Assembly: GCF_006345805.1 (NCBI RefSeq)
Contig: NC_043004.1
Coordinates: 61,628,001-61,692,000 of the forward strand
Direction: 5' to 3'
From: Octopus sinensis
Taxonomy: Eukaryota
DNA length: 64,000 nucleotides
Each line of letters starts with the position of its first letter. Within the stretch, counting starts at the first letter, position 1. Positions 50,824 through 52,672 of the stretch are shown piece by piece. Under the pieces are notes generated by a model. It made no database searches, was not told where the DNA came from, and was given only the letters and a program-made list of their open reading frames with translations. A program made the translations under genes and the position numbers.

Positions 50824-50940
50824 TTATATATATATATGTATATATATATATACATATATATATATATATATATATATATATACATATATATATATATATA
50901 TATATATATATATATATATATATATATATATATATATATA
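50824..50940. repeat. (TA)n microsatellite abutting the palindrome
   Basis: Direct reading. Confidence 0.97.
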
Positions 50941-50998
50941 ACATTATTGGTGAATTGAAGAAATGGAGCTGAACGCAGATTGAACAGAAATCGTTTTA

Positions 50999-51088
50999 TT
51001 TCATTCTACACGTGTTTCGAAAGGCACAAATTACCAAAATCCGATTGAATAATGGGACCATATTGTGTCTTTCTCTTCAGGAAGAAAA
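50999..51088 (-). ncRNA. Canonical type I hammerhead ribozyme (left arm)
   Basis: Mirror of 51258-51347; predicted cleavage between 51007 and 51006 on the minus strand. Confidence 0.87.
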
Positions 51089-51257
51089 AAGGAAATCCGT
51101 TGGAAAAACAAAAACAGAACAGAGGCAGAGCAAAAAACAAATCGAACTGTGCTCCTAAGAGCCCATGGCGAGTTTCGCCATGGGCTCTTAGGAGCACAGT
51201 TCGATTTGTTTTTTGCTCTGCCTCTGTTCTGTTTTTGTTTTTCCAACGGATTTCCTT

Positions 51258-51347
51258 TTTTCTTCCTGAAGAGAAAGACACAATATGGTCCCATTATTCA
51301 ATCGGATTTTGGTAATTTGTGCCTTTCGAAACACGTGTAGAATGAAA
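51258..51347 (+). ncRNA. Canonical type I hammerhead ribozyme (right arm)
   Basis: Stem I UUUUCUUC/GAAUGAAA (one mismatch); CUGAAGA 51266-51272; stem II GAAAG-A-CACAA / UUGUG-C-CUUUC with G10.1-C11.1; GAAA 51328-51331; palindromic stem III ACACGUGU; GUA cleavage after 51339. Confidence 0.87.
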
Positions 51348-52672
51348 TAAAACGATTTCTGTTCAATCTGCGTTCAGCTCCATTTCTTCAATTCACCAAT
51401 AATGTTTTAATTTCAATTATCCGCACCAACGCACGGTTGCAACGCCAGATGGTTGTACCTCCAACCGTGCTGTTCACTGCTGTGATTTTTGCTACTAAGG
51501 TATCGGTTAAACTTTTGATTAATCTACTACAAGATTATTCATCTTTCTATTTCACATAATATATATATATATATATATATATATATAAATAGAGGGAAGA
51601 AGAGAGCAGATTCTGTATACATTCACCATTCTTCCCCCTACAACTTGTATCAACACTACACCTACATATTGCCGGAGGCAGTATATTCAGCGTTTCTGAA
51701 AATACAGATTCCTAATGGTTCAAAATAGCACACGATATCTCAATATCTCTAATTTCACAATTTACATCAACAATGCCTATAAATCGCCAATCACCAACAG
51801 TATTTTATTCAATCTGTCGTTCTCTTATTGTTGAAAATATACTTAACAACAGAATTCAGGCACGAAAGAAAAACAAACTGACTTTGTTACAAATACGTAC
51901 ATACATACATACATCTTTGTATATATATATATGTGCTCGTGTAAAGAGGCAGAGGGGTTGAGAGATAGGCAGATAGGTGTTTGTGCATATATATGTGTAT
52001 GTGTCTATGTCTATATAGATATCTAAGCTTAAGCAAGTTGTATACATATGCGTGCACATTCACGCACACGGAGGCATATGAAGGTATATATATATATATA
52101 TATATATATATATATATATATATATATATATATATATACATACATACATATATATATATACATTCATGCATGACTGTACCCTTGTTCTCGACTAAATTCT
52201 AAGAAGCTAGCAAGTCAATTTAACATTCGCTTTAACACTGACGCGATAAGATATGCCCGTGGACATTTTCACTGTAATTTACTGTAGAATAGCTATTAGC
52301 TATGATGCTTAAGGTTCCAAGCTTTCTTCTATGCTAAACAAGTGAAATTACAAAGGAGAATTTCGCAATTTATCAAGTGTATTCTTTGAAATGAGATACC
52401 AATATAAACTTGAGATAACTGTTAAAGTGTAAAAGTGAAATCCTCTCTCTCAATTTTTATTCTTCAAATACTAACGAGATGGTTCATCTGTTTGAAATTA
52501 AATGTTGTTGCAAATAGTCTGAATAAGGACGATAGCATTGACACTCTAGGAACACGATAAAATAACTTTTACAATGCATTATCGTATTTCTATATTTATG
52601 CATGCATACATACATATAATTTTCAGAAATGTATGTATGATGAATACAACATACTCAGAATTTGAACACTCT

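What the first reader, a model, noticed from the sequence alone, without database searches (positions are those of the whole stretch)
50940..51406. Perfect 467-bp palindrome carrying a canonical hammerhead ribozyme on each strand
Seen: 232-bp arms with no mismatch found, a 3-nt loop and a GC-rich centre (…gagcccatggcga-gtt-tcgccatgggctc…). Each strand's 3' arm encodes a complete type I HHR (CUGAAGA, G-C closed 10-bp stem II, GAAA, palindromic ACACGUGU, GUA site). A transcript from either direction would be cut at the equivalent site (after 51339 on +, after 51007 on -), bounding a 333-nt self-complementary RNA. Established: PLEs carry HHRs and form inverted pseudo-LTRs. Inference: a very young head-to-head HHR element that could yield a ribozyme-trimmed long hairpin RNA (siRNA or ADAR substrate, or a self-priming RT template). 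The hairpin may also sequester the ribozyme. An assembly fold-back artefact must be excluded.
Basis: partly seen in the sequence, partly recalled or inferred. Interest (0 to 1): 0.9.

Follow-up and report, generated by a model that had tools for sequence, protein, structure and literature searches.

The report
Head-to-head hammerhead retroelement in (TA)n
The perfect 467-bp palindrome is real and each arm carries a genuine Penelope-type hammerhead ribozyme, but it is most likely a very young example of a known way these octopus retroelements insert head-to-head into (TA)n microsatellites, not a purpose-built hairpin-RNA gene.

Summary
Positions 50940-51406 form a perfect palindrome with 232-nt arms and a GTT spacer. 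Each arm carries a complete type I hammerhead core: CUGAAGA, a 55-nt helix II, GAAA, the palindromic box ACACGUGU, and cleavage after A51339 (+) or 51007 (-). A motif this good never arose in 1500 shuffled 64-kb strands. Rfam gives no hit, but it also misses every other octopod hammerhead of this type that I found.

The window is octopod DNA. It holds two more complexes of the same kind, each lying between two (TA)n arrays. P3 (54730-55687) has arms 92-94% identical and the same ribozyme architecture. P2 (35405-36136) is homologous to an Octopus sinensis element that also has near-perfect inverted copies between (TA)n arrays. The diverged copies and the second species argue against an assembly artefact.

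The best reading is a single insertion by Penelope-like-element (PLE) machinery of an ORF-less hammerhead element into (TA)n. The two copies lie with 5' ends inward and 3' ends outward.

Each transcript carries only one sense ribozyme. That ribozyme is the dimer-dependent type, and a -425 kcal/mol duplex would sequester it.

This is a new member of a known kind, of modest interest.

The parts
50825..50939 (.). (TA)58 microsatellite abutting the left arm; presumed half of the insertion target
   Evidence: Tandem Repeats Finder; sequence
50940..51171 (-). Left arm. This is element copy A read on the minus strand, with its 5' end at the centre and its 3' end outward against (TA)58.
   Evidence: exact reverse complement of 51175-51406
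50997..51090 (-). Hammerhead of copy A: core CUGAAGA at 51080-51074, predicted cleavage after 51007
   Evidence: Descriptor scans
51172..51174 (.). 3-nt spacer GTT at the junction of the two 5' ends
51175..51406 (+). Right arm. This is element copy B read on the plus strand.
51256..51349 (+). Type I hammerhead of copy B. Helix I pairs 51256-51265 with 51340-51349. The core CUGAAGA is at 51266-51272, helix II at 51273-51327 (55 nt), GAAA at 51328-51331 and the palindromic box ACACGUGU at 51331-51338. Predicted cleavage is after A51339.
   Evidence: Two copies are predicted to pair through an intermolecular ACACGUGU helix.
51407..51558 (+). 152-nt unique extension present only at the right end, reaching the next (TA)n. 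It is probably the 3' terminal part ('tail'-like) of copy B, and it contains a stable stem-loop GCACGGUUG...CAACCGUGC.
   Evidence: single copy; fold z = -2.3. Assigned by analogy with the one-sided extensions of 80 nt in P3 and 107 nt in L004. That it belongs to the element is an inference.
51559..51591 (.). (AT)16 microsatellite; presumed other half of the insertion target
54730..55767 (.). Sister complex P3, an older head-to-head pair between (TA)125 and (TATA)58. The arms are 54730-55167 and 55251-55687 (92-94% identical), with an 83-nt spacer and an 80-nt extension on the right only. The hammerhead on the minus strand is intact (C3 at 54866, cleavage after 54782). The plus-strand copy (C3 at 55551) has decayed.
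35405..36136 (+). Sister complex P2 between (TG/TA)n and (TA)n. An inverted copy of the element's first 120 nt (35405-35524, 100% identical) is followed by a 69-nt copy of the element's 3' end (35523-35591) and then the full element (35593-36136). The element has a degenerate hammerhead with C3 at 35895.

Best explanation
The palindrome is a very recent insertion into a (TA)n microsatellite. It holds two copies of a short, ORF-less, hammerhead-bearing retroelement, a non-autonomous relative of Penelope-like elements (PLEs) of the retrozyme or solo-pLTR kind. The copies are joined 5' end to 5' end, with their 3' ends facing outward. It was most likely made in one retrotransposition event by PLE reverse transcriptase/endonuclease. 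Either both nicked target strands primed cDNA on the element RNA and both cDNAs ran to the same RNA 5' end, or a single cDNA snapped back on itself at that end. The ribozyme is the PLE/satellite 'dimeric' type I hammerhead. It belongs to the element's own life cycle, not to the palindrome. In a read-through transcript the ribozyme would be locked in a 232-bp duplex and would not cleave, so the palindrome as such is probably a by-product with no evolved function. Shown: the structure, the motif and its significance, the (TA)n flanks, the sister complexes and the thermodynamics. Inferred: the RT-mediated origin, that the 152-nt extension belongs to the element, and the ribozyme's inactivity in the hairpin.
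For: (1) The palindrome is perfect and bounded by (TA)58 on the left. On the right a 152-nt extension leads to (AT)16. (2) The hammerhead motif is far beyond chance. It has the PLE-type hallmarks listed in PMC4209133: a long helix II, a G10.1-C11.1 pair, and a palindromic 15.x/16.x box. Two copies are predicted to pair through that box, at -48.5 against 2 x -18.3 kcal/mol. (3) The same geometry recurs: inverted copy, short spacer, direct copy and a one-sided extension, all between two (TA)n arrays. It is seen in P3, whose arms are 92-94% identical and which has the same hammerhead architecture, a 66-nt helix II and box ACAUAUGU. It is seen in P2. It is seen in Octopus sinensis locus L004, with copies 98-99% identical, a 61-nt helix II and box ACGUACGU. 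(4) P2 is homologous to the O. sinensis element (z = 8.2; alignment). (5) PLEs are present: a degenerate PLE lies at 36.75-38.9 kb and ends at a (TA)n array. A classic PLE min-HHR lies about 320 nt 3' of PLE ORF fragments in L005, and its sequence resembles the P3 ribozyme. (6) The literature reports that PLE insertions often carry an adjacent inverted copy, favour microsatellites including (TA)n, and have a 'tail' at only one end (PMC8557442). A purified PLE protein cleaves and extends both target strands at AT-rich sites, with the same RT start sites on both (PMC11167929). Paired min-HHRs 100-700 bp apart on opposite strands are known in Schistosoma (PMC4209133).
Against: The P1 arm has no detectable sequence relative anywhere I could look. 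That covers the window, about 200 kb of other octopod DNA, and ORF-level searches of 5.8 and 1.8 billion proteins. Its PLE affiliation therefore rests on motif type and geometry, not homology. It is not similar to the window's own PLE, and no PLE ORF adjoins it. The one-sided extension (152 nt) is much longer than the published 30-40-bp tail. P1 lacks the unpaired base between A9 and 10.1 that is typical of metazoan PLE min-HHRs. Exactly equal arm lengths need a special explanation, either a defined RNA 5' end or snap-back. No read-level validation was possible, and ribozyme activity is untested.
Confidence: 0.65

Rival explanations
1. DNA-level palindromisation. A single pre-existing copy of the hammerhead element next to a (TA)n array was duplicated in inverted orientation by replication template switching or hairpin-mediated repair, without reverse transcriptase.
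For: (TA)n arrays flank the structure. The arms are perfect with a 3-nt spacer, as expected from intrastrand fold-back. In P2 the inverted segment is the 5'-terminal 120 nt, not a 3'-anchored copy, which target-primed synthesis from both strands does not readily explain.
Against: All four inverted structures seen involve hammerhead elements, with the element's 5' end at the centre and a one-sided 3' extension. A process blind to sequence content would not be expected to do that. PLE machinery is already known to generate adjacent inverted copies (PMC8557442, PMC11167929).
Confidence: 0.13
2. Assembly or sequencing artefact, such as a fold-back chimeric read or missed adapter, that created an arm absent from the organism.
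For: Arms with zero mismatches are what an artefact would give. PLE-type structures are said to cause assembly problems (PMC8557442). No reads were available.
Against: A fold-back chimera would invert everything beyond the turning point. Here the arms stop after 232 nt and the two flanks are unrelated, (TA)58 on one side and unique sequence on the other. The same window has a 92-94% identical, and therefore aged, palindrome of the same design. An independent assembly of another species has a 98-99% identical one.
Confidence: 0.07
3. An evolved hairpin-RNA locus, such as an endo-siRNA or miRNA-like precursor or a dedicated ADAR substrate. The ribozyme would trim the transcript.
For: A read-through transcript would form a 232-bp perfect dsRNA. 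Rfam long-hairpin miRNA models score it at up to 121 bits.
Against: All the miRNA hits are far below their gathering scores and reflect generic hairpin pairing. Only one sense ribozyme is present per transcript, it is dimer-dependent, and it is sequestered. The sister palindrome P3 is decaying, including its ribozyme, with U16.1 lost in one arm. No conservation evidence exists.
Confidence: 0.05
4. A MITE or foldback DNA transposon whose arm contains a hammerhead-like motif by chance.
For: The structure is compact and palindromic and sits in AT-rich DNA.
Against: No target-site duplication or second copy was found. The chance of a motif of this quality is below 1 in 1500 per 64-kb strand. The same ribozyme architecture recurs in unrelated sister elements.
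Confidence: 0.03

Closest known systems
Hammerhead ribozymes of Penelope-like elements (min-HHR and small-helix-III variants; Cervera & de la Pena 2014, PMC4209133)
   Same: It is type I, with the CUGANGA and GAAA cores and a G10.1-C11.1 pair. Helix II is enlarged and helix I is short and weak. Helix III is tiny with a palindromic box that implies action as a dimer. It also occurs as pairs on opposite strands a few hundred bp apart.
   Different: Helix II is far longer (55 nt, against 7-8 bp plus a small loop). P1 has no unpaired base after A9. It is not shown to lie in the pLTR of an ORF-bearing PLE.
PLE insertion architecture (Arkhipova lab, PMC8557442; Frangieh et al. 2024, PMC11167929)
   Same: An adjacent inverted copy forms inverted repeats. 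The insertion is into a microsatellite or AT-rich DNA. An extension is present at only one end. Both target strands can prime reverse transcription.
   Different: There is no RT/GIY-YIG ORF. The copies meet at what looks like a common 5' end rather than at independent 5' truncations. The extension is 80-152 nt rather than 30-40 bp. The arms are perfectly equal with a 3-nt spacer.
Metazoan non-LTR retrozymes (de la Pena lab 2020, PMC7229834; Li et al. 2026 preprint, 10.64898/2026.07.22.740005)
   Same: It is a short (about 230-580 nt), ORF-less element with a type I hammerhead, presumably mobilised by PLEs. Helix III is 2 bp plus a tetraloop, as described for invertebrate motifs.
   Different: Retrozymes are defined by head-to-tail tandem repeats that yield circular RNAs. 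Here the copies are head-to-head, so no transcript carries two sense ribozymes.
Long inverted-repeat hairpin-RNA (hpRNA / endo-siRNA) loci
   Same: A long perfect inverted repeat could give dsRNA if it is transcribed through.
   Different: There is no evidence of expression, processing or conservation. The origin is explained by transposition.

Membership tests
Hammerhead ribozyme, type I | Conserved core C3-U4-G5-A6-N7-G8-A9 and G12-A13-A14 | tested here: met
   CUGAAGA at 51266-51272 and GAAA at 51328-51331
Hammerhead ribozyme, type I | G10.1-C11.1 closing pair, A15.1-U16.1 pair, and H17 (not G) at the cleavage site | tested here: met
   G51273-C51327, A51331-U51338 and A51339
Hammerhead ribozyme, type I | Three helices, with helix I open and helices II and III capped | tested here: met
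   Helix I has 8 of 10 pairs, helix II 10 of 11 pairs plus a structured distal part, and helix III 2 bp plus a 4-nt loop. The monomer hammerhead fold is not the minimum-energy fold (-10.9 against -18.3 kcal/mol).
Hammerhead ribozyme, type I | Match to a curated Rfam hammerhead model | tested here: not met
   No hit at the gathering score or at E<=10 on 1 kb. Control: Rfam also misses the short-helix-II PLE-type motifs L005:12335 and L009:4940, so this negative carries little weight.
Hammerhead ribozyme, type I | Site-specific self-cleavage | not testable with these tools
   This needs in vitro transcription of monomer, tandem dimer and full hairpin constructs.
PLE-associated hammerhead (min-HHR / dimeric class) | Palindromic 15.x/16.x positions and loop 3, allowing an intermolecular helix III | tested here: met
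   The box ACACGUGU is palindromic. The cofold of two copies uses an 8-bp intermolecular helix, at -48.5 against -36.6 kcal/mol.
PLE-associated hammerhead (min-HHR / dimeric class) | Enlarged helix II and shortened or weak helix I | tested here: met
   Helix II spans 55 nt. Helix I is A/U-rich with two mismatches.
PLE-associated hammerhead (min-HHR / dimeric class) | Unpaired nucleotide between A9 and 10.1 | tested here: not met
   It is absent in P1 and present in P3-left and L005.
PLE-associated hammerhead (min-HHR / dimeric class) | Located in the pseudo-LTR of a PLE, or homologous to one | tested here: inconclusive
   There is no adjacent PLE ORF and no similarity to the window's PLE. The source genome could not be searched.
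PLE-associated hammerhead (min-HHR / dimeric class) | Family of copies with covariation in the helices | not testable with these tools
   No second, independent copy of the P1 family was retrievable.
Penelope-like element insertion | Adjacent inverted copy and/or partial tandem (pLTR-like) arrangement | tested here: met
   P1 has the inverted pair. P2 and L004 have inverted plus partial-tandem pieces.
Penelope-like element insertion | Insertion into microsatellite or AT-rich target | tested here: met
   (TA)n lies on both sides of P1 (counting the extension), P2, P3 and L004.
Penelope-like element insertion | RT plus GIY-YIG ORF | tested here: not met
   The only ORFs are the mirror-image 87-91-aa frames across the centre, which have no homologues. 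The element would have to be non-autonomous.
Penelope-like element insertion | 30-40-bp 'tail' at one end | tested here: inconclusive
   One-sided extensions exist but are 152 nt (P1), 80 nt (P3) and 107 nt (L004).
Non-LTR retrozyme | Head-to-tail tandem units, each with a hammerhead, giving circular RNA | tested here: not met
   The copies are head-to-head, and there is no direct repeat of the arm.
miRNA / hpRNA precursor | Match to a curated family above its gathering score, or conservation | tested here: not met
   The best hit is MIR8562 at 121.5 bits against a gathering score of 211. The hits are generic hairpin scores on both strands.

The most novel reading that the evidence does not exclude
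Octopod genomes harbour a so far undescribed class of ORF-less hammerhead elements with unusually long (55-66 nt) helix II. They integrate into (TA)n arrays as 5'-to-5' inverted dimers with a one-sided 3' extension. This would be an in vivo footprint of bidirectional target-primed reverse transcription, or of cDNA snap-back, by PLE enzymes. Perfect copies such as this one would show that the process is ongoing. They could also feed perfect long dsRNA into the siRNA or ADAR pathways of an animal with extreme RNA editing.
Probability: 0.25. Interest if true: 0.5.

Novelty: new member of a known kind. Interest (0 to 1): 0.35.

Why it matters
It gives a clean, datable example of how Penelope-type machinery builds inverted repeats, with zero substitutions between the arms. 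Together with its three sister complexes, it gives a consistent geometry: 5' ends inward, a one-sided 3' extension, and (TA)n targets. That geometry could help decide between bidirectional priming and snap-back models of PLE integration. It also shows that curated RNA models miss a whole class of cephalopod hammerheads. Finally, it warns that perfect palindromes next to microsatellites in octopus assemblies can be biological. It does not reveal a new kind of RNA gene.

Tried and rejected
(1) Rfam found no hammerhead at the gathering score or at a permissive E-value. The control shows that this test is insensitive for PLE-type motifs.

(2) Exact look-up of ten ORFs spanning or flanking the palindrome, meant to find independent assemblies of the locus, returned nothing on record.

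(3) Homology searches with the two palindrome-spanning ORFs, used as a proxy for repeat copies, found nothing in one case. The other gave only two weak hits (E about 1e-4) that look like low-complexity matches.

(4) blastn of the arm, its 152-nt extension and both flanks against the window and ten octopod loci (about 200 kb) found no relatives of P1.

(5) Pfam on nearby ORFs gave nothing.

(6) I tried to build a covariance model from the sister hammerheads, excluding P1, as a hold-out test. MAFFT misaligned the GAAA/helix III side because helix II lengths range from 13 to 66 nt, so I dropped it and relied on descriptor scans with shuffled controls.

(7) I considered and rejected HHR cleavage as the origin of the palindrome centre. 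The centre is 165 nt from the cleavage site.

(8) I considered and rejected a long fold-back chimera, because the flanks are unrelated beyond 232 nt.

Full report
OBSERVATION. Positions 50940-51406 form an exact palindrome. The arms 50940-51171 and 51175-51406 are perfect reverse complements around the spacer GTT. The 235-nt arms listed include one mismatch at 51407. As RNA the stretch folds into one uninterrupted 232-bp hairpin of -425 kcal/mol, z = -52. The arm occurs nowhere else in the window.

THE RIBOZYME MOTIF. On the plus strand the right arm reads as follows:
- the helix I 5' strand at 51256-51265;
- the core CUGAAGA at 51266-51272;
- a 55-nt helix II at 51273-51327, closed by G-C, with 5 bp, an A.C mismatch, 5 bp and a structured distal part;
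- GAAA at 51328-51331;
- the palindromic box ACACGUGU at 51331-51338, giving A15.1-U16.1 and C-G around a 4-nt loop;
- A17 at 51339;
- the helix I 3' strand at 51340-51349.

The minus strand carries the mirror image, with cleavage after 51007. That follows automatically from the palindrome.

A loose descriptor finds at least one hit in about 9% of shuffled 64-kb windows. At the observed quality there were 0 hits in 1500 shuffled strands. A descriptor that also captures sister copies gives 4 hits in 185 kb of octopod DNA and none in 150 shuffles.

Rfam reports no hammerhead at the gathering score or at E<=10 on 1 kb. The miRNA hits there are generic hairpin scores far below their thresholds. 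Rfam also fails on the short-helix-II hammerheads L005:12335 and L009:4940. Its silence therefore says little for this class.

WHAT KIND OF HAMMERHEAD. [quoted passage not shown] They infer dimeric action, and they detected no cleavage by single motifs in vitro. P1 fits all of these except the unpaired base after A9.

Energetically the monomer hammerhead fold (-10.9 kcal/mol) loses to an alternative fold (-18.3). Two copies are predicted to join through an 8-bp intermolecular ACACGUGU helix, at -48.5 against -36.6 kcal/mol.

CONTEXT. The window is 33% GC and full of microsatellites. Its best protein match is an Octopus sinensis PLE fragment, and its dispersed repeats match O. sinensis at 74-88%. 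A degenerate PLE with N-terminal, RT-thumb and GIY-YIG-like motifs lies at about 36.75-38.9 kb on the minus strand. Its 3' side runs to a (TA)n array at about 36.2 kb. It is not similar to the P1 arm.

The left arm of P1 abuts (TA)58. The right arm is followed by 152 nt of unique sequence and then (AT)16. That extension contains a stable stem-loop.

SISTER STRUCTURES. A self-comparison of the window revealed two more inverted structures, each lying between two (TA)n arrays.

P3 (54730-55687) has arms of about 438 nt that are 92-94% identical, an 83-nt spacer, and an 80-nt extension on the right side only. The outer part of each arm holds a hammerhead of the same design: CUGAAGA, an A bulge, a 66-nt helix II, GAAA, the box ACAUAUGU, A17 and a 4-bp G/C helix I. 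The left, minus-strand copy is intact, with cleavage after 54782. The right copy has lost U16.1.

P2 (35405-36136) has three parts. An inverted, 100% identical copy of the element's first 120 nt comes first. A 69-nt copy of the element's 3' end follows, and then the full element. The element carries a slightly degenerate hammerhead: CUGAUGA, C.A at 10.1-11.1, the box ACAC-C-GUGU and a perfect 6-bp helix I.

In O. sinensis, locus L004 holds an ORF-less element between two (TA)n arrays. It consists of an inverted copy (14317->13871), a 229-nt partial direct copy and a 577-nt direct copy, all 98-99% identical. Its hammerhead has a 61-nt helix II, the box ACGUACGU and a 6-bp helix I. The direct copy has a C3-to-U change.

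P2 is homologous to this element (z = 8.2; alignment). P2's 3' end aligns with the end of the L004 inverted copy, whereas the direct copies of L004 run 107 nt further.

P1, P3 and the L004 family share no significant sequence beyond the ribozyme core. They are different families with one architecture.

Two further hammerheads, L005:12335 and L009:4940, are solo copies without inverted repeats. L005:12335 is a classic min-HHR about 320 nt 3' of PLE ORF fragments.

INTERPRETATION. Published PLE biology fits well. PLE insertions often carry an adjacent inverted copy, prefer microsatellites including (TA)n, and show an extension at only one end (PMC8557442). A purified PLE protein cleaves and extends both target strands at AT-rich sites, with the same internal RT start sites (PMC11167929). 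Opposite-strand min-HHR pairs 100-700 bp apart are known in Schistosoma (PMC4209133).

I therefore read P1 as a single, very recent insertion of a non-autonomous hammerhead element into a (TA)n array. Two copies are joined 5' to 5'.

The exactly equal arms and 3-nt spacer suggest one of two routes. Both cDNAs may have run off the same RNA 5' end, or one cDNA may have snapped back on itself. P2, whose inverted piece is the 5'-terminal 120 nt, favours snap-back. L004, whose inverted copy ends at the family's usual 3' end, favours priming from both strands. I cannot decide between the two.

A purely DNA-level palindromisation at a fragile (TA)n tract remains possible. It is less likely given that all four inverted structures involve hammerhead elements in the same orientation.

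A fold-back assembly artefact is unlikely. The flanks differ beyond 232 nt, and aged copies (P3) and copies from another species (L004) of the same design exist. Reads are still needed to exclude it.

The palindrome, the ribozyme elements, the cleavage coordinates, the PLE link, the youth of the structure and the sequestration caveat all stand.

The '333-nt self-complementary RNA bounded by two cuts' does not stand. The two sites lie on opposite-strand transcripts, so any RNA has one sense ribozyme and could be cut once at most. That ribozyme is the dimer-dependent type, and in a read-through transcript it would be zipped into the duplex.

If each copy has its own promoter near its 5' end, as PLE pLTRs do (PMC8557442), transcription would instead diverge from the centre and no hairpin would form. 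This is speculation.

NOVELTY. Hammerheads in PLEs, ORF-less derivatives (retrozymes) and inverted PLE copies are all known. I found no paper describing hammerhead elements in cephalopods. Helix II here is unusually long, and the 5'-to-5' geometry with a one-sided extension is cleanly displayed. I rate this a new member of a known kind, with modest interest.

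Noticed in passing
window 54730-55767: P3 is an older head-to-head hammerhead palindrome between (TA)125 and (TATA)58. Its arms are about 438 nt and 92-94% identical, with an 83-nt spacer and an 80-nt extension on the right only. The ribozyme is intact on the minus strand (C3 at 54866) and has decayed on the plus strand (U16.1 to A).
   Followed up: yes
window 35405-36136: P2 consists of an inverted 120-nt copy of the element's 5' end (100% identical), a 69-nt copy of its 3' end, and the full 544-nt element with a degenerate hammerhead (C3 at 35895). 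It lies between (TG/TA)n and (TA)n and is homologous to the O. sinensis L004 element.
   Followed up: yes
L004 13838-15200 (Octopus sinensis CM016862.1): An ORF-less hammerhead element is present as an inverted copy, a partial tandem copy and a full copy (98-99% identical) between two (TA)n arrays. It appears to lie within the range of a 7tm_2 receptor gene. One copy has a C3-to-U core mutation.
   Followed up: yes
L005 12325-12382; L009 4895-4950; L009 1541-1608: Two solo hammerheads occur in another octopod-like ENA assembly. One is a classic PLE min-HHR just 3' of PLE ORF fragments. The other is a type I motif with the 10-nt palindromic box ACAGAUCUGU. There is also a sub-threshold Rfam Hammerhead_HH9 hit (26 bits).
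   Followed up: partly
window 36750-38900 (minus strand): A degenerate, frameshifted Penelope-like element has N-terminal (ADKG-type), RT-thumb and GIY-YIG-like motifs. Its 3' side runs to the (TA)n array at about 36131-36200. No hammerhead was recognisable in it.
   Followed up: partly
window 42381-42575 (minus strand): A stop-free segment with a YMDD reverse-transcriptase motif is probably a LINE fragment.
   Followed up: no
window 52675-53051, 53699-54069, 61973-62341: A repeat family of about 370 bp, possibly SINE-like, has copies in both orientations. It is 74-88% identical to several sites in O. sinensis locus L001.
   Followed up: no
window 51425-51475: A stable stem-loop GCACGGUUG...CAACCGUGC sits in an AC-rich context, starting about 25 nt beyond the right arm. 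It recalls the AC-rich stem-loop where a lizard PLE starts reverse transcription (PMC11167929).
   Followed up: partly
window 12951-13490, 27726-28127, 42693-43322: Long trinucleotide and other simple-repeat tracts give spurious poly-N, poly-S and poly-I ORFs. The window has no convincing host-gene exon among ORFs of at least 110 aa.
   Followed up: no
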